Under the pieces are notes generated by a model. The model searched no databases and was not told the origin of the DNA. It was given only the letters and a program-made list of their open reading frames with translations. A stretch of DNA of 15,420 bases from Octopus sinensis (taxonomy: Eukaryota), in contig NW_021825505.1 of the NCBI RefSeq assembly GCF_006345805.1, forward strand, positions 1-15,420. Reading direction: 5' to 3'. The position numbers were made by a program, and so were the translations under genes. The stretch's first letter is position 1; each line of letters begins with the position of its first letter. Shown in pieces: positions 869 to 14,338 of this stretch.

Positions 869-880
869 CGCGCGCATTTA

Positions 881-1250
881 TACTCTTTTACTCTTTTACT
901 CTTTTACTTGTTTCAGTCATTTGACTGCGGCCATGCTGGAGCACCACCTTTAGTACTTATTCTATCGGTCGCTTTTGCCGAACCGCTAAGTGACGGGGAC
1001 GTAAACACACCGGCATCGGTTGTCAGCATGCTAGGGGGACAAACACAGACACAAACACACACACATATACATATATATACATATATACGACAGCTTCTTT
1101 CAGTTTCCGTCTACCAAATCCACTCACAAGGCATTGGTCGGCCCGAGGCTATAGCAGAAGACACTTGCCCAAGATGCCACGCAGTGGGACTGAACCCGCA
1201 ACCGTGTGGTTGGTTAGCAAGCTACTTACCACACAGCCACTCCTGCGCCT
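881..1250 (-). mobile_element. tRNA-derived SINE family A, copy 1
   Basis: Minus strand begins GGCGCAGGAGTGGCTGTGTGGTAAG (A box) ... GGTTCAGTCCC (B box) and ends in an (AAAAGAGT)n-like tail. Near-identical to 4868-5282, with a ~40-bp internal deletion. Confidence 0.9.
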
Positions 1251-1377
1251 TATGTGTATTTAACAGAAAATACTTATTGAACAACTAGACATTCTTTGCT
1301 CAAATTTCTAAGTTTCCTCTTTCTCGCATCAAGTCAGGTATTTCTGAAGAAATTTCCCTCAGCCGGACGGGGCCACC

Positions 1378-1508
1378 ATGATGCCATTTCTAGTTTATTC
1401 TCGAAGTTTCGCCATTTTAATAGCAGCCCTCAATTGCGCGGTTCTTGCTCAATTTACAGACTACACGACAAACAGCACGACAAACAGCACGGATACAGAA
1501 AAAAAAAG
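1378..1508 (+). CDS. First coding exon (signal peptide plus S/T-rich glycosylated stub) of an unnamed single-pass membrane protein
   Basis: Acceptor TTTCCCTCAG at 1362, Kozak GCCACCATG (ATG 1378), MMPFLVYSRSFAILIAALNCAVLA/QFTDYTTNSTTNSTDTEKK, donor AAG|GTAGGT at 1509 (phase 2). Confidence 0.75.
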
Positions 1509-1533
1509 GTAGGTAATCGTTTGCCTTTTCTCA

Positions 1534-1534
1534 T

Positions 1535-1622
<88 letters not shown>

Positions 1623-1627
1623 TATAT
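1534..1627. repeat. (TA)n microsatellite
   Basis: Direct reading. Confidence 0.95.
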
Positions 1628-1839
1628 GTTCCGAAGTCGGGACGCCATGATAGATCGTTAGCTCCTATACACATTTTTTTCTCTCCTTGTTTTTTTTCTG
1701 TGTATCTTTCTGTCGAAGAGCGTAGGCTCGAAACGTAAAAGACTTTTTCTATTTCTATTCCTGAGCGCCATACTAATACATTTGTTTGTTTGTACTCCAC
1801 CTGCCTTCGTCTTTTGTTTATTTTCGTAAACTTTCCCGT

Positions 1840-1840
<1 letters not shown>
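1628..1840 (+). mobile_element. Penelope-like/retrozyme-type short repeat with a hammerhead-like motif, between two (TA)n tracts
   Basis: TCTTT-CTGTCGAA-GAGC GTAG GCTC-GAAACGTA-AAAGA at 1705-1742 has type I minimal hammerhead geometry; GAAGAG...CTCGAAACG is typical of PLE terminal repeats. Confidence 0.55.
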
Positions 1841-1841
<1 letters not shown>

Positions 1842-1884
<43 letters not shown>

Positions 1885-1891
1885 TATATAT
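1842..1891. repeat. (TA)n microsatellite
   Basis: Direct reading. Confidence 0.95.
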
Positions 1892-2059
1892 TGCATTAAT
1901 TAACAGTAGAGTGGATTTTGTATTAGACTTTTTATGCTATTATTGAATACTATTACCCTAACTTCAACTCCGAAGTTCCTGACGTAGATTCAATGGAAGT
2001 GTACCACAACTACGGATGACAGCAGGAAGCCTATACTGTTCCGGTGCTCTGCTCAACAT

Positions 2060-2192
2060 TTAAACACACTAATTGAATTATACGTATTTGTTCACTCAAG
2101 CTACATAATGCAAAATTTTTACTTTTCAAAAATTCCAATTCTAAAGGGTCGAAAAGAAAACAAAGCCGAGCAACGCCGGGCTATACTACTAG
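2060..2192 (+). mobile_element. Helitron 3' terminus (left boundary approximate)
   Basis: Imperfect GC-rich hairpin GCCGAGCAACGCCGGGC at 2165-2181, then CTAG (2189-2192) and T, the canonical Helitron end. Confidence 0.7.
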
Positions 2193-2207
2193 TGTTTGAT
2201 ATTACAG

Positions 2208-2482
2208 GATACGAGCTATGCCATGTCCAGCACAGATTCCATAACAAACGTTCCTGTCGATACGCGTGCTAATGCTAAACAGGGCAGCGACTGCATGGCA
2301 GATAAATCATTTCTTCATAATGGTCAGGATTAGGTATTTGAAATTGAAATTAAAGAATTACAAGGCAAAAAAACGCATTCTTTTCCCTTGTTGAATGTTC
2401 AAACAAAAGCTCCACCAAAACTGAAATATCAATTCTTTTATCCAGGAGGGACTATCGAAGAACGTCATATTGCTTATTTCAG
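2208..2482 (+). pseudogene. Decayed exon, Ig-like inter-domain segment
   Basis: Acceptor ATTACAG at 2207. One frame is open except TAG 2331-2333: ...KSFLHNGQD*VFEIEIKELQGKKTHSFPLLNVQTKAPPKLKYQFFYPGGTIEERHIAYF. Phase-2 donor CAG|GTTGGT at 2483. Length 275 nt is not a multiple of 3. Confidence 0.5.
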
Positions 2483-2794
2483 GTTGGTATGCTTTTGACT
2501 TTCATCTTCTTTCGGCATCTTTCTCTCATTCTGTCTCTGTCTGTCTGTCTGTCTGTCTCTGTGTCTCTCTATCTCGCCCCACCTCTCTCAATGTTTGTCT
2601 GATTTACTATCAGTCCGATAAATACTAATTTTTTTCTTATTACTGTTTTATTTTGGCGAACTCCCATTGTCATTCGATGTTTAAAAACCAGTTTTATAGA
2701 TATTCCTTTCAAAATTCTTGTTTTGTTTTTCACACATTAACTTATGTAAGTTGAACTAGAGAAAAGAGCCGAGTCGTTTCTTGTTGTACGGAAT

Positions 2795-2847
2795 CCCAAA
2801 AATCTTATATGGGGGGGGGGCACATGAACCCCGGTTGAGAACCCCTG
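2795..2847 (+). mobile_element. hAT-type MITE right-end fragment
   Basis: Ends GGTTGAGAACCCCTG, similar to the TIR GGTTGAGAATCACTG at 12310-12324. Confidence 0.5.
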
Positions 2848-2911
2848 AGTGTAAGCAATCTAGCCGTACATTGCAAAACATTACAGAAGTAATTAATTGC
2901 AACGGAAACAG

Positions 2912-3424
2912 TGTTCATCCAAAAAAAGTAATCTTTATATCCAACTTAACGTAGTTGTGTTAGGACGCAGAACACTGCGTTATTCACCAAGAGGAGATCC
3001 CTCATAATGACTCTGGTTGCATAAAGGCGCTCCTAATTTTAGGAGAATGAGTGCTTTTATGTACCGCCAGCTCTTACAAGAGGTTCTCTCTCTCGAAATA
3101 TTCTACGTCGTAACACAACCTTCACGTTAAGTTGGAGATCAAGATTACAAAAGTACGTTACGGAGATGTACTTGCATAGCAAGTGACCTGATCTGAGATC
3201 GTGTGCTGTAACGAAAACAATTGCAGCGTGGAAGGTGTTTATAAGCCATTTAAGAAACACACAAAAACCGTTAAATTCACTTCAGCATTTAAATTTAATT
3301 TGTCAAAATATTTTCGTCGCTTTGAGATCGCGACCTGTTCACTGACAAAATTCCGTGCTGCATCTATAACTAAAAGTACTTTAGTTATAGTAGAAAACAT
3401 TACAGCATATATAAAAAGAAAATA
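2912..3424 (+). pseudogene. Decayed Ig-superfamily exon with multiple stops and frameshifts
   Basis: Mosaic reading VHPKKVIFISNLT / VVVLGRRTLRYSPRGDPS**LWLHKG / YKRFSLSKYSTS*HNLHVKLEIKITKVRYGDVLA*QVT*SEIVCCNENNC...TVKFTSAFKFNLSKYFRRFEIATCSLTKFRAASITKSTLVIVENITAYIKRK shows Ig strand motifs. Bounded by CAG| at 2911 and ATA|GTAAGT at 3425, both phase 2. Confidence 0.6.
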
Positions 3425-3565
3425 GTAAGTCAGAAGTACAGTTGAACTTAAAGGGAGAAATCCTGCGAGTGAAAATATTCGTCAGGAACAAAATTAAGTT
3501 ATGGGAGGTCCAAAACCCGGGAGGATTTTTTTTTTTCTTTTTTGAGACTTTTTTGGCGCAGAAGA

Positions 3566-3958
3566 TGGAAGCACTCCGTCGGTTACGACGACGAGGGTTC
3601 CGGTTGATCCGATCAACGGAACAGCCTGCTCGTGAAATTAAAGTGCAAGTGGCTGAGCACTCCACAGACACGTGTACCCATAACGTAGTTCTCGGGGATA
3701 TTCAGCGTGACACAAAGAGTGACAAGGCCACAAGGCCAGCCCTTTGAAATACAGGTACAACAGAAACAGGAAGTAAGAGTGAGAGAAAGTTGTGGTGAAA
3801 GAGTACAGCAGGGATCGCCACCACCCCCCTGCCGAAGCCTCGTGGAGCTTTTAGGTGTTTTCGTTCAATAAACACTCACACACCCGGTCTGAGAATCGAA
3901 ACCGCGATCCCACGACCGCGAGTCCGCTGCCCTAACCACTGGGCCATTGCGCCTCCAC
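3566..3958 (-). mobile_element. tRNA-derived SINE family B, copy 1 (full length)
   Basis: Minus strand starts GTGGAGGCGCAATGGCCCAGTGGTTAGGGC...GGTTTCGATTC and ends ACCGACGGAGTGCTTCCA. Closely similar to 8470-8838. Confidence 0.9.
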
Positions 3959-4060
3959 TAGTTCATCATATATGTCAACAAATACGGTAGGAGGTTCCGT
4001 TTTAAACCATTTGTCTCGTTACAATAAATTCATATTTGATACTGATATAAAATCTTCCAG

Positions 4061-4150
4061 TTCTGATGAAAATACAAATGTTACCGATTCCATTGCAGCC
4101 ATCACTCCATGCTTAGCCATACCAGTAATATGCGTCACCGTCTACCTCTG
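4061..4150 (+). CDS. Transmembrane exon of the single-pass membrane protein
   Basis: Branch-like ACTGAT 4041-4046, acceptor ATCTTCCAG at 4060, 90 nt phase 2/2, SDENTNVTDSIAAITPCLAIPVICVTVYL, donor CTG|GTAAGA at 4151. Confidence 0.75.
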
Positions 4151-4319
4151 GTAAGACCCTCATTTTATTCTTTCACTTGTTTTTAGTCAGGCTGGCGAAA
4201 CTTCTGAAAGGGCTTCTAGGCAAACGAATCGAGCCCTGCACTTTTTTTAAGTCTAATGCAAATACGCATACACTCATAGATATATACACGCACTTACACA
4301 CACACACACACATACGTAT

Positions 4320-4332
4320 ATATCTATATCTA

Positions 4333-4416
<84 letters not shown>

Positions 4417-4452
4417 ATATAACACATTATATATACAACATATATATATGTG

Positions 4453-4484
<32 letters not shown>

Positions 4485-4539
4485 TACATATACATACTAT
4501 ATATACATATATATATATACACACACACATATATTATAC

Positions 4540-4582
<43 letters not shown>

Positions 4583-4610
4583 TATATATACACACACACA
4601 CACATATATG
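4320..4610. repeat. Compound (TA)n/(CA)n microsatellite
   Basis: Direct reading. Confidence 0.9.
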
Positions 4611-4622
4611 TATAATTTTTTA

Positions 4623-4824
4623 TTCTTTTACTTGTTTCGGTCATTTGACAGCGGCCATGCTGGAGCACTGCCTCTAGTCGACCAAAAAGACCCAAGGGCT
4701 TATCCTTTGTAAGCCTAGTTATTTATTCTATATGTTCCTTTTGACGAACCGCTAAGTTACGGGAACGTAAACATACCAACATCGGTTGTGAAGCAGTGGT
4801 GGGAGGGACAAGCACAGACACACA
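4623..4824 (-). mobile_element. SINE family A, copy 2 (3' half only, diverged)
   Basis: Aligns by eye to 4868-5070 (CTTTTACTTGTTTC...GCGGCCATGCTGGAGCAC...GAACCGCTAAG...ACAGACACAC). Confidence 0.85.
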
Positions 4825-4867
4825 ATTCCATATATTTCCATATATTATATATATATATATATATATA

Positions 4868-5282
4868 TTCTTTTACTCTTTTACTTGTTTCAGTCATTTG
4901 ACTGCGGCCATGCTGGAGCACCGCCTTTTAGTCGAGCAAACGACCCCGGGACTTATTCTTTGTAAGCCCAGTACTTATTCTATCGGTCTCTTTTGCCGAA
5001 CCGCTAAGTGACGGGGACGTAAACACACCAGCATCGGTTGTCAAGCAATGCTAGGGGGACAAACACAGACACACAAACATATACACACACACTTATATAT
5101 ATATATACATATATACGACAGGTTTCTTCTTCAGTTCCTCCGCCTACCAAATCCACTCACAAGGCATTGGTCGGCCCGGGGCTATAGCAAAGACACTTGC
5201 CCAAGATGCCACGCAGTGGGACTGAACCCAGAACCATGTGGTTGGTTAGCAAGCTACTTACCACACAGCCACTCCTGCGCCT
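4868..5282 (-). mobile_element. SINE family A, copy 3 (full length)
   Basis: Same A/B-box head and tail as 881-1250. Confidence 0.9.
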
Positions 5283-5324
5283 ATATATATATATAAATAT
5301 ACACACTTAGCCATACCAAGACAG

Positions 5325-6365
5325 CTATTCACCTTTTTGGTGTATTAGGTTCCCAGTCAAGAAATTCAATTGGTTTCTCATTCCCCCAAATGCGACAAAT
5401 GATGACGATTAACCTTTCCACGTGTATGGAAGGTCGCTTCATCACTGAACAGAATTTTGCTGATTAAATCAACACTTTCAGTTTGATCAATAAGCTCAGC
5501 GTACATCACTGATCTTTGGAGATAATCCTATTCTTGTAAGTTGCGAAAAATTTGAATGCGATAAGCATTTTCGTTCAGGTCACTTGCTACGATTCTGTGG
5601 ATTGGTGTACGTGAAATTTCTACCATGTTAATTACCCTACGAGAAGATAATTGCGGATCCTGTTCAGATACTTCGCGAACCATTTCAATTCTTCGTATAT
5701 CTCGCCCTTTATCTTTCATGTTACCACAAACATCCGTTCTTTTCACATTCATCATCAGTTATTTGGGTCTGAAAAAGATAAATAAAACTACACAAATATT
5801 GACATAAACGGATAAGTATTTTGTTAAAACACAAATTTGCACTACTTACGCTATCCTTTATGGTGGTATAGAATTATTTTCAGGGCAGCGAGCTGGCAGA
5901 ATCGTTAGCACGCCGGGCGAAATGCGTAGCCGTATTTCGTCTGCAGTTTCGTTCTGAGTTCAAATTCCGCCGAGGTCGACTTTGCCTTTCATCCTTTCGG
6001 GGTCGATAAATTGAGTACCAGTTACGCACTGGGGTCGATATAATCGACTTAATCCGTTTGTCTGTCCTTGTTTGTCCTCTCTGTGTTTAGCCTCTTGTGG
6101 CTAGTAAAGAAATAGGTATTTCGTCTGCCGTTACGTTCTGAATTCAAATTCCGCCGAGGTCAACTTTGCCTTTCATCCTTTCGGTGTCGATTAAATAAGT
6201 ACCAGTTACGCACTGGGGTCAATATAATCGACTTAATCCGTTTGTCTGTCCCTGTTTGTCCTCTCTGTGTTTAGCCCCTTGTGGGTAGTAAAGAAATAGG
6301 TATAGAATTATTTTTTTTAAAAATCGGATGTCACTTAAATAGATAATGATTTTTGAGACACCCTA
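5325..6365 (-). mobile_element. Degenerate Tc1/mariner transposon (rosa/DD41D-like transposase), 3'-truncated and interrupted by a SINE
   Basis: Minus strand: HTH-like VREVSEQDPQLSSRRV...ISRTPIHRIVASDLNENAYRIQ, then ILFSDEATFHTRGKVNRH (FSDEATFH at 5426-5449). Terminus AGGGTGTCTCAAAA at ~6351-6364 resembles the CAGGGTGTCTCAAAA TIR. Confidence 0.85.
5881..6298 (+). mobile_element. tRNA-derived SINE family C with an internal 184-bp tandem duplication and 16-bp TSD
   Basis: Head GGGCAGCGAGCTGGCAGAATCGTTAG...GAGTTCAAATTCC, central CCTTTCATCCTTTCGGGGTCGATAAA domain (MetaSINE-like from recall). TSD GGTATAGAATTATTTT at 5865-5880 and 6299-6314. Confidence 0.9.
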
Positions 6366-6731
6366 GTTTAGTGGTAGAACACTCATCCAGTATCTGAGGG
6401 GTACAGGTAAATTTTATTTACCCGTCTTATAAGGCTAAATACCCAATTTTTTTCTGCTGTCCTTACCGCTTTACTGCGTTTGCGATTTACTTCCTCGTCT
6501 ATAATATTTATCAATTTGCTGGCCATTTACCAAAATTTGAAAAGAAATTGTTATATTATGGTAACACCTGGATCTTCAGATTTTCTTCGTCCATTTATTA
6601 TACATATTGAATCTTCAAATTTAGAGGTTTTGGAGATGTTGGGGGTTGCACCCCTTAACGGCTACATGATCTTATGCCACATGGTGCAAATTTCTACAAA
6701 TACATTTCTCAATAATCAAATAATTCTTTCT

Positions 6732-7289
6732 AATTTTGGACAAAAGATCAGCTGTTTTAGGGGAGGGGCAAATCAATTACATCGACACCCCGTACTCCGT
6801 CGATATTTTATCGACCCCGAAACCATGACGGACAAAGTCAGTCTCGGTTGAATTTGAACTTATGGCGTAAAGAGGGACGAAACGCCGCTAAGCACTTTTA
6901 CCAGCGATCCCACTAGTTCGCCGCCGCCGCCTCAGGGCTCTCCAGGATGGGTTTCAAATTTTGGCACAAGGCCAGCAAGGGAGTAAGTCGATGACCTCGA
7001 CCCCAGAACTGAGCTAATACTTATTTTATCGACCCCGAAAGGATGAAATGCTGTTAAGTATTTGGCCCTGAGTTCTAAGGATATTCGCCGTCGCCTTTGT
7101 ATATAATAATTTCAAATTTTGGTGCAACATCAGCAATTTCGGGGACGGTTGGGGACTGGTACTTATTTTATCGATCCCGAAAGGATGAACGGCAAGGTCG
7201 ACCCCGGCGGAATTTGAACTCAGAACGGGAAGACGGATAAAATGCTGCTGAACCTTTTTACTCCGCGTGCTAACGATTCTGCCAGCTCC
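6732..7289 (-). mobile_element. Three degenerate family-C-related SINE copies in tandem (~6732-6930, 6948-7095, 7111-7289)
   Basis: Each has an AATTTTGG...CAGC-type end and the TTTTATCGA(C/T)CCCGAAA reverse complement of the C central domain. The third retains the head (GCTAACGATTCTGCCAGCTC). Confidence 0.75.
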
Positions 7290-7334
7290 AATAACAATCA
7301 ACTGTATAAAAATAAAACTGGAATTTTCAATAGG

Positions 7335-7425
7335 TAAATAAGTTACCGGAGTCGATTTGTTGGACTAAACACTTCATGGTGGTGCCCCAGCATGGTCGCT
7401 CTCCAATGAATGATACAAGTAAAGA
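7335..7425 (+). mobile_element. SINE 3' fragment with the family-A-type tail
   Basis: GGAGTCGATTTG...GACTAAA...GGTGGTGCCCCAGCATGG...ACAAGTAAAGAG matches the sense-strand tail of family A. Confidence 0.6.
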
Positions 7426-7616
7426 GGGACGAAACGTTGAACGGTTTTGTATTCCTCAAAGACAAAATAGCAATCGAAGGAATCCGTGGGCGAAAAATGG
7501 TGAACATCCTTCTTAAGGATTCAAATGTCTCTCAGACATATTTGAATCGGTGCCAGGTTTGTAATTCCTCACAATGACTATTGAGTGTTCCTAATGCGGA
7601 AATATTCTCGTTTCAG

Positions 7617-7758
7617 CTACTTATTAAGAGATCGACCGAAACCTCGGCCTCTGCCGCCTCCAGACATGGTAGAAAGAATGTATCTAGAAGCTCAGAGGAA
7701 TGCAACTTTGCGCTCCCAGTCTATTTTCAACTCGACAGAACATATAGTGACCAGCGCG
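7617..7758 (+). CDS. Cytoplasmic-tail exon of the single-pass membrane protein
   Basis: Branch CTAAT 7591-7595, acceptor TTCTCGTTTCAG at 7616. Phase-2 start completes TG|C (Cys), then YLLRDRPKPRPLPPPDMVERMYLEAQRNATLRSQSIFNSTEHIVTSA. Donor GCG|GTAAGA at 7759. Confidence 0.75.
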
Positions 7759-7789
7759 GTAAGATTTTGAAATTCTAAAACAGTTTCGA

Positions 7790-7915
7790 TGGGCGTGGCT
7801 CTGTGGTAAGACGCCTACTTCCCAACCACATGGTCTTCGGTTCAATCCCGCCATAGCTTTGGCCTACCGAGGCCTTGTGGGTGGATTTGTCCGGCGGAAA
7901 CTTAGGAACCCGTCG
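7790..7915 (+). mobile_element. SINE family A-related 5' fragment, internally deleted
   Basis: GGGCGTGGCTCTGTGGTAAG...GGTTCAATCCC, then CCATAGC...GTGGATTTGT...GGAAAC, running into (TA)n. Confidence 0.7.
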
Positions 7916-7992
7916 TATATATATATATATATATATATATTAATGTGATATATATATATATATATTATATATATATATATATATATGTATTA

Positions 7993-8050
<58 letters not shown>

Positions 8051-8052
8051 AT

Positions 8053-8119
<67 letters not shown>

Positions 8120-8205
8120 TATAGATAGATAGTAGATAGATAGATAGATAGATAGATTAGATAGAGATAGATAGATAGTAGATAGAAGATAGATAGATAG
8201 AGATT
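7916..8205. repeat. Compound (TA)n + (GATA)n microsatellite
   Basis: (TA)n to ~8053, then (GATA)n. Confidence 0.95.
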
Positions 8206-8206
8206 T

Positions 8207-8457
8207 ATAAGTTATATCAGGCTCGTTATGTTCCATCTTCTTATCCGTTTGAATGGGAAAATCCCACAAAATCTTGCATGCTCCCGACTTACGTACTCTT
8301 TCTTCCCGAAGAGTGTATCATGAACATCTAGCTTCAAACCCCTCCTTCTGTCAAAGCTTCCGGTGTAAAACTTTCACAACTTCATCGTGCCTCTGTTCCT
8401 TATATTCTCCCTGTGCCAGCTTGGGTTATTTTGCAACAACGTATGCCATTATTTCAT
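8207..8457 (-). mobile_element. R4/Dong/NeSL-type non-LTR retrotransposon fragment (zinc-knuckle to RLE region)
   Basis: Minus strand PKLAQGEYKEQRHDEVVKVLHRKL*QKEG...KILWDFPIQTDKKMEHNEPDI, the conserved RHD...LWDF.IQTD...N.PDI block. Confidence 0.85.
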
Positions 8458-8469
8458 TCCAAATACTCC

Positions 8470-8838
8470 TTGGAAGCACTCCGTCGGTTACGACGACGAG
8501 GGTTCCGGTTGATCCGATCAACGGAACAGCCTGCTCGTGAAATTAACGTGTAAGTAGCTGAGCACTCCACAGACACGTGTACCCTGAACGTAATTCTCGG
8601 GGATATTCAGCGTGACACAGAGAGTGACAAAGCCGGCCCTTTGAAATACAGGTACAACAGAAACAGGAAGTAAGAGTGAGAGAAAGTTGTGGTGAAAGAG
8701 TACAGCAGGGATCACCACCATCCCCTGCCGGAGCCTCGTGGAGCTTTAGGTGTTTTCGCTCAATAAACACTCACAACGCCCGGTCTGGGAATCGAAACCG
8801 CGAGTCCGCTACCCTAACCACTGGGCCATTGCGCCTCC
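8470..8838 (-). mobile_element. SINE family B, copy 2, with 12-bp TSD
   Basis: Similar to 3566-3958. TSD TCCAAATACTCC at 8458-8469 and 8839-8850. Confidence 0.9.
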
Positions 8839-8931
8839 TCCAAATACTCCACGTTTTGCTGACCCCTTCTCCATAAACATATTTTCTCAAGTTGTTTTGT
8901 GGCAGCCATTGATCTTCAGCAGCAACAATAA

Positions 8932-9301
8932 AGTGGAGGCGCAATGGCCCAGTGGTTAGGGAAGCGGACTCGCGGTCGGAGAATCGCGGTTTGGATTCCC
9001 AGACTGGGCGTTGTGTGTGTTTATTGAGCGAAAACACCTAAAGCTCCACGAGTCTCCGGCAGGGGGTAGTGGCGACCCCTGTTGTACTCTTTCGCTCCAA
9101 CTTTCTCTCACTCTTTCTTCCTGTTTCTTGTCCCCCGACTTCCTACGCAACCGCTGAGATGGATGCGCATTCATCCATCCGTCGATGCTCTCGGTGTCGG
9201 AGGTTGACCTGCTTTCTCTTATGCGGGTCTTACGAATAGCAAAGGACCACGTTTCGGACTTCTCCCTCTAATGGGACGAAGACCACCTCGCTCAACAGCA
9301 A
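8932..9301 (+). mobile_element. SINE with family-B head/body and a different 3' half, 15-bp TSD
   Basis: 8933-~9128 matches family B, then unrelated sequence to a CAACAGCAA tail. TSD CAGCAGCAACAATAA at 8917-8931 and 9302-9316. Confidence 0.85.
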
Positions 9302-9464
9302 CAGCAGCAACAATAAGGCTTTCTCTTTCTTTTTCATCAACCGGGCCCTGGTTTTTGTTCCATATGCATCCTCCGTGGCTTTCCAAAAGCTAACCATTCA
9401 AAATGTTCTGTCCGATCTGGTTAAATCTCTTTGAATTTCGTTTTTGTTCTTTCTCCTTTTCTAG

Positions 9465-9470
9465 TTTTGA
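9465..9470 (+). CDS. Probable terminal coding exon (Phe + stop), followed by 3' UTR
   Basis: Strong acceptor TTTCGTTTTTGTTCTTTCTCCTTTTCTAG at 9464. Phase-0 join to 7758 gives ...HIVTSA-F-TGA. Confidence 0.5.
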   Translation, partial: F

Positions 9471-9480
9471 TCACCTGTTT

Positions 9481-9543
<63 letters not shown>

Positions 9544-9655
9544 GTCATCATCATCATCATCGTCATCATCATCGTCATCGTCGTCATCATCGTCATCGTC
9601 GTCATCATCGTCATCGTCGTCATCATCGTCATCGTCGTCGTCATCATCATCATCG

Positions 9656-9702
<47 letters not shown>

Positions 9703-9760
9703 GTCATCATCATCATCATCGTCATCATCATCGTCATCGTCGTCATCATCGTCATCGTCG

Positions 9761-9825
<65 letters not shown>

Positions 9826-9919
9826 GTCATCATCATCATCATCGTCATCATCATCGTCATCGTCGTCATCATCGTCATCGTCGTCATCATCGTCATCGTC
9901 GTCATCATCATCATCATCG

Positions 9920-9950
<31 letters not shown>

Positions 9951-9951
9951 C

Positions 9952-9982
<31 letters not shown>

Positions 9983-10078
9983 TCATCGTCATCATCATCA
10001 TCATCGTCATCATCATCGTCATCGTCGTCATCATCGTCATCGTCGTCATCATCGTCATCGTCGTCATCATCATCATCG

Positions 10079-10134
<56 letters not shown>

Positions 10135-10228
10135 GTCATCATCATCATCATCGTCATCATCATCGTCATCGTCGTCATCATCGTCATCGTCGTCATCATC
10201 GTCATCGTCGTCATCATCATCATCATCG

Positions 10229-10282
<54 letters not shown>
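9481..10282. repeat. ~800-bp (ATC/GTC)n trinucleotide array with higher-order structure
   Basis: Direct reading; ORFs 9403, 9431 and 9471 are translations of this repeat. Confidence 0.95.
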
Positions 10283-10283
<1 letters not shown>

Positions 10284-10762: not shown

Positions 10763-10825
<63 letters not shown>

Positions 10826-10882
10826 ATTATTATTATTATTACTATTATTATTATTATTATTATATATTATTATTATTATTAC

Positions 10883-10939
<57 letters not shown>

Positions 10940-10978
10940 TATTATTATTATTATTATTATTTTACTATTTTATTATTA

Positions 10979-11014
<36 letters not shown>

Positions 11015-11096
11015 TATTATTATTATTATATTATATTATTATTATTATTATTATTATTATTATCATTATTATTATTATTATTTTATTATTATTATT
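10763..11096. repeat. (ATT)n microsatellite with ACT/indel variants
   Basis: Direct reading. Confidence 0.95.
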
Positions 11097-11151
11097 TTGT
11101 CAGCTATAAATCTTCCGGAACTGACTTTTACTTGGATGCTGTGGTACTTAC

Positions 11152-11267
11152 CGTGAATAAACATAACATACGCGGACTATCGACTTTATGGCTGATACCC
11201 AAAGAATATCGCTACTTTCTAAGAATGGAAAACAACCATTCTGAAGACAGAACTTCATTTCGCAGCA
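11152..11267 (-). CDS. Candidate antisense exon, product unknown
   Basis: Minus-strand acceptor TTGAATTTTACAG and donor CACG|GTAAGT flank 116 nt. The phase-0 frame is open: CCEMKFCLQNGCFPFLESSDILWVSAIKSIVRVCYVYS. Confidence 0.35.
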
Positions 11268-11668: not shown

Positions 11669-11766
<98 letters not shown>

Positions 11767-11790
11767 GTATGTATATATATATATAATATA
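11669..11790. repeat. (TA)n microsatellite
   Basis: Direct reading. Confidence 0.95.
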
Positions 11791-12210
11791 CCTTATCTTA
11801 TTTAATGAGTGTTGTTACATTTGAGAAACGTTTTCTCTTTATTTAAATAAGTGGTTCTCAGCCGGGGTCCATATGGCCCTTGGTGGTGGGGGGTTCACAT
11901 GAGATTTTAAAAAATTTCTGTGGAATAATCTGGTTATATTTCTATAATACACAAAATATTTAAACATTTTTTAATATAATTCCTAATAAAATTAGGAATT
12001 ATATTAAAAAATGTTTAAATATTTTGTGTATTATAGAAATATAACCAGATTATTCCACAGAAATTTTTTAAAATCTCATGTGAACCCCCCACCACCAAGG
12101 GCCATATGGACCCCGGCTGAGAACCACTTATTTAAATAAAGAGAAAACGTTTCTCAAATGTAACAACACTCATTAAATAAGATAAGGTATATTATATATA
12201 TATATACATA
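11768..12210. repeat. Perfect inverted repeat: 220-bp arms, 3-nt spacer
   Basis: 11768-11987 is the exact reverse complement of 11991-12210 by manual comparison; spacer AAA at 11988-11990. Confidence 0.95.
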
Positions 12211-12324
12211 AAAATATAATGGGGGGGTTTTACACATCCATCGAATGGCTATGAGGGTTTCCACCTCTCTGGGTAAAATAAGAATTGAAGGGATCCATAA
12301 GTTAAAAAGGGTTGAGAATCACTG
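11849..12324 (+). mobile_element. hAT-type MITE interrupted by the inverted duplication
   Basis: Left TIR AAGTGGTTCTCAGCC, right TIR GGTTGAGAATCACTG. Degenerate 8-bp TSD ATTTAAAT (11841-11848) / ACCTAAAT (12325-12332). Confidence 0.7.
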
Positions 12325-12766: not shown

Positions 12767-13384
12767 ACTATTTATTTACCGAGGAATAAGAAGCCAAGGT
12801 CGTGACTCTTGCAGAAGTCCGACTGAGAAATGTTGAGTGTATTTTAAATTAAATACTATTTTTTAAAAGAAAAACGGTCTACCTTTATTTCATTTGTTTC
12901 GCAAACAATTGCAACAGTGTCAGCATATTTTTAGCAATGGTAAGAACTGTGTGAAGTTAACAGTCTGATTAGAATTTCGTAGCATTGTGAAATTTAGCAA
13001 AGATTTTCTATGCAAGAATTGTTGTAAATGTTTCAGTCGTGGTAATATTGCTATGTCCAAGTTTATTTTCTGAATATCTGTCCCTGCATTAACATAAGAG
13101 GTGAGTTAAAGGTCAGTAATTCAATCAACGGAATTTATTTTATAATGATTAAGATATTTAAGAGGAGACGATCAGGAGTGAATCCAATTTACGAAGTTAG
13201 TTTATGTAAGCATAAAGCTCTTGCATTTTCCTATTATATAGAGTGTTGGCTGAGAACTATAGATGTATACTTTGTGTGTACACAAATAAATACATATACA
13301 TCCATCTCTGCATACACACTTATACATACATACACACTTATAAGTATCAACATACATACATACATTCATACATACATACGATGT

Positions 13385-14108: not shown

Positions 14109-14193
14109 CATACATATATGTGAAGGCACGTAGCTTACTCATTATTGTATTCATGTTGCTCCAATCCACTGAGCTGGAAAAAGTAGATTGTAT

Positions 14194-14338
14194 CTGTATT
14201 CCAAAGGATCCGGGTTTGTCACATTCTGTGTCACGCTGAAATTCCCTGAGAACTACGTTATAAGAGTACACGTGTCTGTGGAGTACTCAGCCACTTGCAC
14301 GTTAATTTCATGAGCAGGGACTCTCGTCGCCGTAAGTG
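14194..14338 (+). mobile_element. SINE family B, 3' fragment
   Basis: TGTGTCACGCTGAA...GAGAACTACGTTA...ACACGTGTCTGTGGAGT.CTCAGCCACTTGCACGTTAATTTCA matches the sense strand of copies B1/B2. Confidence 0.85.

What the first reader, a model, noticed from the sequence alone, without database searches (positions are those of the whole stretch)
1363..9470. Hidden four-exon gene encoding a ~122-aa miniature type I membrane protein, missed by the ORF track
Seen: exons 1378-1508, 4061-4150, 7617-7758 and 9465-9470 have consensus splice sites and join in frame (369 nt; phases 2,2,0) to give MMPFLVYSRSFAILIAALNCAVLA/QFTDYTTNSTTNSTDTEKKSSDENTNVTDS-IAAITPCLAIPVICVTVYLCYLL-RDRPKPRPLPPPDMVERMYLEAQRNATLRSQSIFNSTEHIVTSAF. 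The start is a perfect Kozak. Inference: cleavable signal peptide, ~30-aa S/T-rich ectodomain with three N-glycosylation sequons (NST, NST, NVT), 23-aa TM with basic stop-transfer, proline-rich SH3/WW-type motif and a Tyr. The architecture is that of a small signalling adaptor or co-receptor; I do not recognise the family.
Basis: partly seen in the sequence, partly recalled or inferred. Interest (0 to 1): 0.75.

Follow-up and report, generated by a model that had tools for sequence, protein, structure and literature searches.

The report
Annotated octopus membrane microprotein gene, mis-spliced

Summary
The arithmetic is right. The four stated exons have GT/AG sites and join in frame to the quoted 122 aa. 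The gene is not hidden.

The RefSeq protein comes from five coding exons: 1378-1508, 2446-2482, 4099-4150, 7617-7758 and 11104-11109.

The cause is an A9 run at 1499-1507. The RefSeq protein needs mRNA with A10, and the O. vulgaris orthologue has A10. In O. vulgaris the five-exon model is intact with all GT-AG sites.

The signal-peptide, short glycosylated stalk, membrane-helix and Pro-rich-tail layout survives, with two ectodomain sequons rather than three and a C-terminal -SAL. An exhaustive search found no homologue outside O. sinensis and O. vulgaris, and there was no Pfam family. Function is unknown. Interest is low.

The parts
1378..1508 (+). Coding exon 1. It holds the ATG (GCCACCATGA context), a signal-peptide-like segment (MMPFLVYSRSFAILIAALNCAVLA) and TTNSTTNST with two N-glycosylation sequons. 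The canonical donor GT is at 1509-1510.
   Evidence: It is 100% identical to O. vulgaris L009:13124-13255 except for the length of the A run. It is single-copy in the genome.
1499..1507 (+). A9 homopolymer at the end of exon 1. It is one A shorter than in O. vulgaris (A10) and than in the mRNA implied by the RefSeq protein (…EKKK|EGLS…).
   Evidence: With A9 and canonical sites the five-exon model is frameshifted. The exact RefSeq protein is obtained from this DNA only by the join 1378-1507 + 2444-2482, whose intron is GG..CC. That join yields the same mRNA as A10 with a GT..AG intron.
1464..1491 (+). 12-nt tandem duplication (CACGACAAACAG x2.3) inside exon 1. It creates the repeated TTNS/TTNS and so both ectodomain sequons.
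   Evidence: (Tandem Repeats Finder).
2446..2482 (+). The acceptor is ttatccag| and the donor is |gttggt.
   Evidence: It is present in both the RefSeq O. sinensis model and the O. vulgaris model (GGLSKNDILLIS).
4099..4150 (+). Coding exon 3 (52 nt, core of the membrane helix: AITPCLAIPVICVTVYL). The acceptor is ccattgcag|.
4061..4098 (+). It is intronic in the annotated model. It reads in frame only on the A9 assembly and gives F** in O. vulgaris.
   Evidence: It shows 0 of 38 substitutions against O. vulgaris, which is uninformative because only about 1 is expected.
7617..7758 (+). Coding exon 4 (142 nt). It encodes the end of the membrane helix, the RDR stop-transfer residues, KPRPLPPP, and a predicted helical tail.
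   Evidence: It is the best protein match in the genome search (E 3e-23).
11104..11180 (+). Last exon: CTA TAA (L, stop) at 11104-11109, then a short 3' UTR with AATAAA at 11156-11161. The 3' end near 11180 is inferred, not observed. The acceptor ttttgtcag| follows directly on the (ATT)n microsatellite.
   Evidence: Both species' annotations use the same exon. This is the only + strand AATAAA between 8932 and 11985. The 76 nt after the stop are 100% identical to O. vulgaris.
9465..9470 (+). It has a good acceptor by sequence but is not used in either annotation. An 800-bp (ATC)n follows, and there is no poly(A) signal for 1.7 kb.

Best explanation
The locus is the already annotated Octopus sinensis gene LOC115227237. 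It has five coding exons: 1378-1508, 2446-2482, 4099-4150, 7617-7758 and 11104-11109. These are followed by a short 3' UTR with a poly(A) signal at 11156.

The assembly carries A9 where the transcript, and O. vulgaris, have A10 at the end of exon 1.

The product is a 122-aa protein without detectable relatives outside the O. vulgaris/O. sinensis pair. The rest of this description is inferred:
- A signal peptide is cleaved near A24|Q25 (AVLA|QF fits the -3/-1 rule).
- A ~26-residue extracellular stalk carries two N-glycosylation sequons.
- One ~27-residue membrane helix (VILLISAITPCLAIPVICVTVYLCYLL) contains three Cys and two Pro and is followed by a basic stop-transfer (RDR).
- A ~45-residue cytoplasmic tail carries a polyproline stretch (KPRPLPPP, class-I SH3-ligand-like), a predicted helix, and a C-terminal S-A-L that fits a class-I PDZ ligand.

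The most likely mode of action is a small type I membrane glycoprotein that tethers or modulates partner proteins through its membrane helix and tail motifs. It would act as an accessory or adaptor subunit rather than an enzyme or a ligand-binding receptor. Gene structure and topology are reasonably shown. The function is inference only.
For: Identity of the gene:
- The protein search returns XP_029653988.1 'uncharacterized protein LOC115227237 [Octopus sinensis]', 122 aa, on a contig of 15420 bp, which is the window.
- The genome has 13,516 contigs and 2,719 Mb. This matches the O. sinensis assembly of Li et al. 2020 as tabulated in PMC10700109.

Exon structure:
- The join 1378-1507 / 2444-2482 / 4099-4150 / 7617-7758 / 11104-11109 translates to XP_029653988.1 letter for letter.
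- O. vulgaris has A10. Its canonical five-exon model is intact with GT-AG at every intron.
[quoted passage not shown] It is therefore largely independent of RefSeq, yet it shares exons 2-5.
- The poly(A) signal lies 47 nt after the RefSeq stop.

Coding status:
- An ORF of at least 122 aa arises in 6 of 5000 shuffles of the spliced mRNA.
- Between O. sinensis and O. vulgaris there are 2 nonsynonymous and 3 synonymous differences, pN/pS 0.21.
- The nonsynonymous rate (0.7%) is below the intron rate (2.9%), one-sided p 0.012. The synonymous rate (3.4%) is about equal to the intron rate.

Topology:
- Two hydrophobic segments appear in a Kyte-Doolittle scan, residues 4-24 and 46-79.
- The single-sequence AlphaFold model gives helices at 2-35, 43-78 and 89-121.
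Against: - No transcript reads could be examined here. Exon usage rests on two annotation pipelines and one close orthologue.
- O. sinensis and O. vulgaris differ by only about 3%, so the selection test rests on five substitutions.
- Both nonsynonymous changes fall in the small exon 2.
- The O. vulgaris annotated model omits exon 1, which encodes the signal peptide.
- No orthologue was found in any other annotated cephalopod. A young or spurious ORF is therefore not excluded.
- Whether A9 is an assembly error or a real allele is not known.
- SH3- and PDZ-type motifs are short and common by chance.
- No signal-peptide or topology predictor was available.
- The structure model has mean pLDDT 71 and was built from a single sequence.
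Confidence: 0.8

Rival explanations
1. The reader's four-exon transcript (1378-1508 / 4061-4150 / 7617-7758 / 9465-9470) is the true or major isoform in O. sinensis. On this view A9 is the real sequence and the RefSeq model is wrong.
For: On the window as it stands, this is the only model with canonical GT-AG sites throughout and an open frame. The acceptor at 9464/9465 has a very good polypyrimidine tract.
Against: - The RefSeq protein requires an mRNA with A10 plus exon 2446-2482. This is hard to obtain without transcript evidence, because on this DNA it implies a GG..CC intron or an inserted base.
- Both annotations use 4099 and 11104.
- There is no poly(A) signal for 1.7 kb after 9470.
Confidence: 0.05
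2. The A9 run is a genuine allele or fixed change in the sequenced O. sinensis animal. The canonical transcript is then frameshifted (…EKKRRDYRRTSYCLFQPSLHA*) and this copy is a null allele or young pseudogene. The reader's ORF is an accidental by-product.
For: The assembly reads A9. Canonical five-exon splicing on A9 ends in a stop within exon 3. Only one copy exists in the assembly.
Against: - The RefSeq product corresponds to A10 mRNA. This suggests the transcripts used for annotation had A10.
- Single-base deficits in homopolymers are the usual residual error of long-read assemblies (own knowledge).
- The same scaffold carries a suspicious 230-nt perfect palindrome that O. vulgaris lacks.
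Confidence: 0.1
3. The transcript is real, but the ORF is not translated into a functional protein. It would be a lineage-specific non-coding or recently born transcript whose ORF and hydrophobic segments are fortuitous.
For: - There is no homologue among 1.84 billion representative proteins apart from the sister species, no Pfam family and no paralogue.
- T-rich sequence easily encodes hydrophobic stretches.
- The O. vulgaris annotation chose a different first exon.
Against: - An ORF this long is rare in shuffles (6 of 5000).
- pN/pS is 0.21, with the nonsynonymous rate below the intron rate (p 0.012).
- The stop lies in the last exon, 6 nt past the last junction, so the mRNA is not a target for nonsense-mediated decay.
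- The order signal peptide, sequons, membrane helix, basic stop-transfer is coherent.
Confidence: 0.12

Closest known systems
RefSeq XP_029653988.1 / UniProt A0A6P7TQH4, uncharacterized protein LOC115227237 (Octopus sinensis)
   Same: It is the same locus on the same 15,420-bp scaffold. Exon 1 and exon 7617-7758 are shared, as are the length (122 aa) and the overall architecture.
   Different: It has five coding exons rather than four. Residues 44-56 are KEGLSKNVILLIS rather than SSDENTNVTDSIA. The last residue is L rather than F. It implies A10 rather than A9 in the mRNA.
CAI9739978.1 / A0AA36BTI2, hypothetical predicted protein (Octopus vulgaris, chromosome OX597837.1)
   Same: It is the orthologue. 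Exons 2-5 are shared, and its C-terminal 78 residues are 97% identical to residues 45-122 of the RefSeq protein.
   Different: The annotated model starts at another exon 3 kb upstream (MSSTFHTKGDSLLIYAETVYM). It skips the signal-peptide exon, although that exon is intact in the O. vulgaris DNA.
Small single-pass mucin-stalk membrane proteins (Pfam TMEM154 PF15102, Mid2 PF04478; by architecture also SMAGP-like small cell-surface glycoproteins)
   Same: They share the layout: a short S/T/N-rich glycosylated ectodomain, one membrane helix, a basic stop-transfer and a short cytoplasmic tail.
   Different: The Pfam scores are 13 bits, against cut-offs of 30 and 23. The matches are compositional and cover the stalk plus the membrane segment. 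There is no evidence of homology.
Transmembrane adaptor proteins of vertebrate lymphocytes (LAT, SIT, LIME type); comparison from own knowledge
   Same: Both have a very short ectodomain (N-glycosylated in SIT), a single membrane helix with Cys at the cytoplasmic boundary, and a tail made of short linear docking motifs.
   Different: Those adaptors work through several tyrosine-based motifs. This tail has one Tyr (Y96) that is not in a YxxΦ or ITAM context. There is no sequence similarity, and the phylum is different.

Membership tests
RefSeq gene LOC115227237 (is the finding this annotated gene?) | The same scaffold, with a protein derivable from the window's DNA | tested here: met
   The exact translation of 1378-1507 / 2444-2482 / 4099-4150 / 7617-7758 / 11104-11109 equals XP_029653988.1. 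The contig length on record is 15420.
Type I (signal peptide-bearing) single-pass membrane protein | An N-terminal cleavable signal peptide with n-region, h-region and a small -3/-1 cleavage site | tested here: inconclusive
   R9 lies in the n-region. The hydrophobic stretch 11-24 has a Kyte-Doolittle score of 1.7-1.8. AVLA|QF fits the -3/-1 rule by eye. No SignalP-type predictor was available, and the O. vulgaris annotation omits this exon.
Type I (signal peptide-bearing) single-pass membrane protein | One internal membrane-spanning hydrophobic helix followed by cytoplasmic basic residues | tested here: met
   19-residue Kyte-Doolittle windows reach 2.65 over residues 49-79, followed by R78-D-R80. 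The model has a helix at 43-78.
Pfam Adeno_E3_CR2 (PF02439) | Score at or above the gathering threshold (36 bits) | tested here: not met
   16.2 bits, E 0.009, over the membrane segment only.
Pfam TMEM154 (PF15102) / Mid2 (PF04478) | Score at or above the gathering threshold (30.3 / 23.2 bits) | tested here: not met
   13.3 and 13.2 bits. No TMEM154-like or Mid2-like protein appears in the exhaustive phmmer search.
SH3 / PDZ ligand-bearing adaptor | Tail motifs that bind SH3 or PDZ domains | not testable with these tools
   KPRPLPP fits [RK]xxPxxP, and the C-terminal S-A-L fits [ST]-x-Φ (sequence). Both are short motifs that occur by chance. Binding was not tested.

The most novel reading that the evidence does not exclude
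LOC115227237 is a young gene restricted to the Octopus lineage, possibly born de novo. It encodes a translated, selectively constrained membrane microprotein that recruits SH3/PDZ scaffold proteins. That would make it a cephalopod-specific addition to membrane signalling. This reading fits three results: no relative among 1.84 billion representative proteins, no paralogue, and pN/pS of 0.21.
Probability: 0.25. Interest if true: 0.35.

Novelty: already known. Interest (0 to 1): 0.12.

Why it matters
The gene is already in RefSeq and UniProt as an uncharacterised protein, so nothing new is discovered.

The useful outcome is methodological. A one-base homopolymer deficit in a long-read assembly can lead a reader, or an ab initio gene finder, to a fully canonical, open, plausible but wrong splice model.

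The locus is also a small example of an orphan membrane microprotein in octopus. It would only become interesting with expression, translation and partner data.

Tried and rejected
- Homologue searches. [quoted passage not shown]
- Pfam gave only sub-threshold matches to the membrane segment.
- A paralogue search in the window's own genome found only the window's own exons plus noise. A DNA search with exon 1 found a single copy, so there is no second haplotype scaffold with A10.
- An exact look-up of the RefSeq protein's encoding contigs returned nothing, because records of the window's own genome are left out.
- I tried to reach the O. bimaculoides locus by synteny through the upstream Cu/Zn superoxide dismutase gene. 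Only a partial O. sinensis orthologue on a 2,990-bp contig and distant hits were found. No deeper orthologue could be examined.
- A search for the O. vulgaris alternative first exon in O. sinensis found only repeat matches.
- A literature search for the gene, protein and UniProt identifiers (and a guessed mRNA accession) found no papers.
- Rfam and tRNA scans of the window found nothing.
- Long stop-to-stop ORFs in the window are all low-complexity or microsatellite translations.
- I did not run a fold search. A single-sequence model made of three helices would give meaningless matches.
Full report
**1. The observation**

The window is AT-rich (38% GC), full of microsatellites and SINE-like repeats, and clearly eukaryotic. 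Each is bounded by AG and GT. Together they sum to 369 nt with phases 2, 2, 0 and translate to exactly the quoted 122 residues. The start context is GCCACCATGA.

**2. What the locus is**

- XP_029653988.1 is 'uncharacterized protein LOC115227237 [Octopus sinensis]'. It is 122 aa, 91% identical, and recorded on a contig of 15,420 bp, which is the window itself.
- CAI9739978.1 is 'hypothetical predicted protein [Octopus vulgaris]'. It is 99 aa long.

The window is the whole of contig C1976 of a genome of 2,719,151,902 bases in 13,516 contigs. These figures match the O. sinensis assembly of Li et al. 2020 as tabulated in PMC10700109. So the gene is not hidden. It is annotated in RefSeq and UniProt, with no function assigned. 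No paper in the library mentions its identifiers.

**3.

The RefSeq protein reads …DTEKKK-EGLSKNVILLIS-AITPCL…TSAL.

- EGLSKNVILLIS is encoded at 2446-2481, in a 37-nt exon (2446-2482) with acceptor ttatccag| and donor |gttggt.
- The next exon then starts at 4099, after ccattgcag|, and not at 4061.
- The last codon and stop are CTA TAA at 11104-11109, after ttttgtcag|. AATAAA follows at 11156-11161.
- That AATAAA is the only one on the + strand between 8932 and 11985.

**4.

On the window's DNA, the canonical five-exon join (1378-1508 / 2446-2482 / 4099-4150 / 7617-7758 / 11104-11109) is 368 nt and frameshifted after exon 1.

The exact RefSeq protein is recovered from the unaltered DNA only by the join 1378-1507 + 2444-2482 + the remaining exons. 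The first intron of that join is GG..CC. The join produces the mRNA string G-A10-GGAGGGA. A genome with ten A's and an ordinary GT..AG intron would produce the same string.

The orthologous O. vulgaris locus (L009, from chromosome OX597837.1) has exactly that. It carries A10 where the window has A9 at 1499-1507, and exon 1 is otherwise identical.

In O. vulgaris the five-exon model is 13124-13255, 14191-14227, 15872-15923, 19042-19183 and 24336-24341. It is canonical at every intron and gives an intact 122-aa protein.

My inference is as follows.
- The transcripts that supported the RefSeq model carried A10.
- The assembly's A9 is most likely a homopolymer error of the long-read assembly. Less likely, it is a real allele.

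Independent hints of local assembly weakness support this.
- The locus sits on a 15-kb unplaced scaffold.
- The neighbouring SOD gene's orthologue is on a 2,990-bp contig.
- The scaffold carries a 230-nt, 99% perfect palindrome at 11758-12220, of which O. vulgaris has only one arm.

**5. How independent the two annotations are**

According to PMC10700109, the O. vulgaris annotation combined three sources through EVidenceModeler and PASA:
- Iso-Seq and RNA-seq transcript models;
- ab initio predictions.

The O. sinensis RefSeq set was not among the inputs. Even so, it agrees with RefSeq on exons 2-5 and their junctions.

It disagrees on the first exon. It starts at L009:10001-10063 and skips the signal-peptide exon, although that exon is intact in O. 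vulgaris. I could not find a counterpart of that alternative exon in O. sinensis. Whether it is an alternative promoter or an annotation choice is open.

**6. Whether it is a coding gene**

- With exons taken from the annotation, an ORF of at least 122 codons appears in 6 of 5000 dinucleotide-preserving shuffles of the ~478-nt spliced mRNA.
- O. sinensis and O. vulgaris differ at 2.9% of intron sites (149 of 5132) and at 5 of 368 coding sites.
- The five coding differences are E45G and V51D (both in exon 2) and three synonymous changes. This gives pN/pS = 0.21.
- The synonymous rate is 3.4%, about equal to the intron rate. The nonsynonymous rate is 0.7%, below the intron rate with one-sided binomial p = 0.012.

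This is modest evidence for constraint on the protein and it rests on few events. The stop codon lies in the last exon, 6 nt after the last junction.

**7. The protein**

- Kyte-Doolittle scanning finds two hydrophobic segments, residues 4-24 and 46-79, the latter peaking at 2.65.
- The first follows R9 and ends in AVLA|QF, which fits a signal-peptidase site. This was judged by eye; no predictor was available.
- The mature ectodomain would be about 26 residues (QFTDYTTNSTTNSTDTEKKKEGLSKN). Its two NST sequons were created by a 12-nt tandem duplication.
- The membrane helix is long (VILLISAITPCLAIPVICVTVYLCYLL), with three Cys and two Pro, and is followed by RDR.
- The tail carries KPRPLPPP, which fits [RK]xxPxxP. 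A stretch modelled as a helix covers 89-121 (pLDDT 75-86, single-sequence AlphaFold). The tail ends in -TSAL, which fits a class-I PDZ ligand.
- The NAT and NST sequons in the tail would be cytoplasmic and so unused.
- These motifs are short, and I treat them as hints only.

**8. Relatives**

- An exhaustive phmmer search over 1.84 billion representative proteins found only the two octopus proteins.
- The genome has no paralogue.
- Pfam gave only sub-threshold matches over the stalk and membrane segment: Adeno_E3_CR2 at 16 bits against a cut-off of 36, TMEM154 at 13 against 30, and Mid2 at 13 against 23.

The protein belongs to no described family. By layout it resembles small mucin-stalk single-pass glycoproteins and transmembrane adaptor proteins, but it meets no membership criterion. 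Orthologues in more distant cephalopods may exist unannotated. I had no means to search those genomes, and a synteny route through the SOD neighbour failed.

**9. Verdict**

The best-supported structure is the five-exon RefSeq model. Function remains unknown. My working view is a small type I membrane glycoprotein acting as an accessory or adaptor subunit through its membrane helix and tail motifs, held with low confidence. Interest is low.

Noticed in passing
window 11758-12220: There is a near-perfect palindrome: arms 11758-11987 and 11991-12220, 230 nt each, 99% complementary, with a 3-nt spacer. The O. vulgaris orthologous region has a single arm (L009:24954-25188). This is either an inverted duplication private to this scaffold or a long-read assembly artefact.
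   Followed up: partly
window 9481-10283 and 10763-11096: There are two very long trinucleotide microsatellites in the last intron: (ATC) of about 268 copies with a higher-order pattern of interspersed variants, and (ATT) of about 113 copies. The (ATT)n runs directly into the acceptor of the final exon (11103/11104), so the repeat itself supplies the pyrimidine-rich tract. O. vulgaris has the same arrangement.
   Followed up: partly
window 1464-1491: A 12-nt tandem duplication (CACGACAAACAG, 2.3 copies) lies inside coding exon 1. It produces TTNS-TTNS and thereby both ectodomain N-glycosylation sequons.
   Followed up: yes
L009:10001-10063 and L009:13124-13255 (O. vulgaris): The annotated O. 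vulgaris protein CAI9739978.1 starts in an exon 3 kb upstream and skips the signal-peptide exon. That exon is nevertheless intact there and identical to O. sinensis apart from the A run. This may be an alternative promoter or a mis-annotation. No counterpart of the upstream exon was found in the O. sinensis assembly.
   Followed up: partly
window 876-1259, 4602-5115, 4866-5283; 5932-6303; 3566-3729 / 8471-8634; 8659-8813 / 8974-9128: Several interspersed repeats are present. A SINE-like element (…TTTCAGTCATTTGAC.GCGGCCATGCTGGAGCACCGCC…) occurs in several copies, with many copies in the O. vulgaris locus. There is a 253-nt unit in two tandem copies, a 184-nt tandem duplication, a 164-nt direct repeat 4.9 kb apart, and a 155-nt inverted repeat. 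None overlaps a coding exon.
   Followed up: no
L009:1-4748 (O. vulgaris) and protein P0003: The upstream neighbour in O. vulgaris is a Cu/Zn superoxide dismutase-domain gene with an acidic His/Asp-rich C-terminal extension. Its O. sinensis counterpart is only a partial protein on a 2,990-bp contig. This chromosomal region is therefore shattered into small unplaced scaffolds in the O. sinensis assembly.
   Followed up: no
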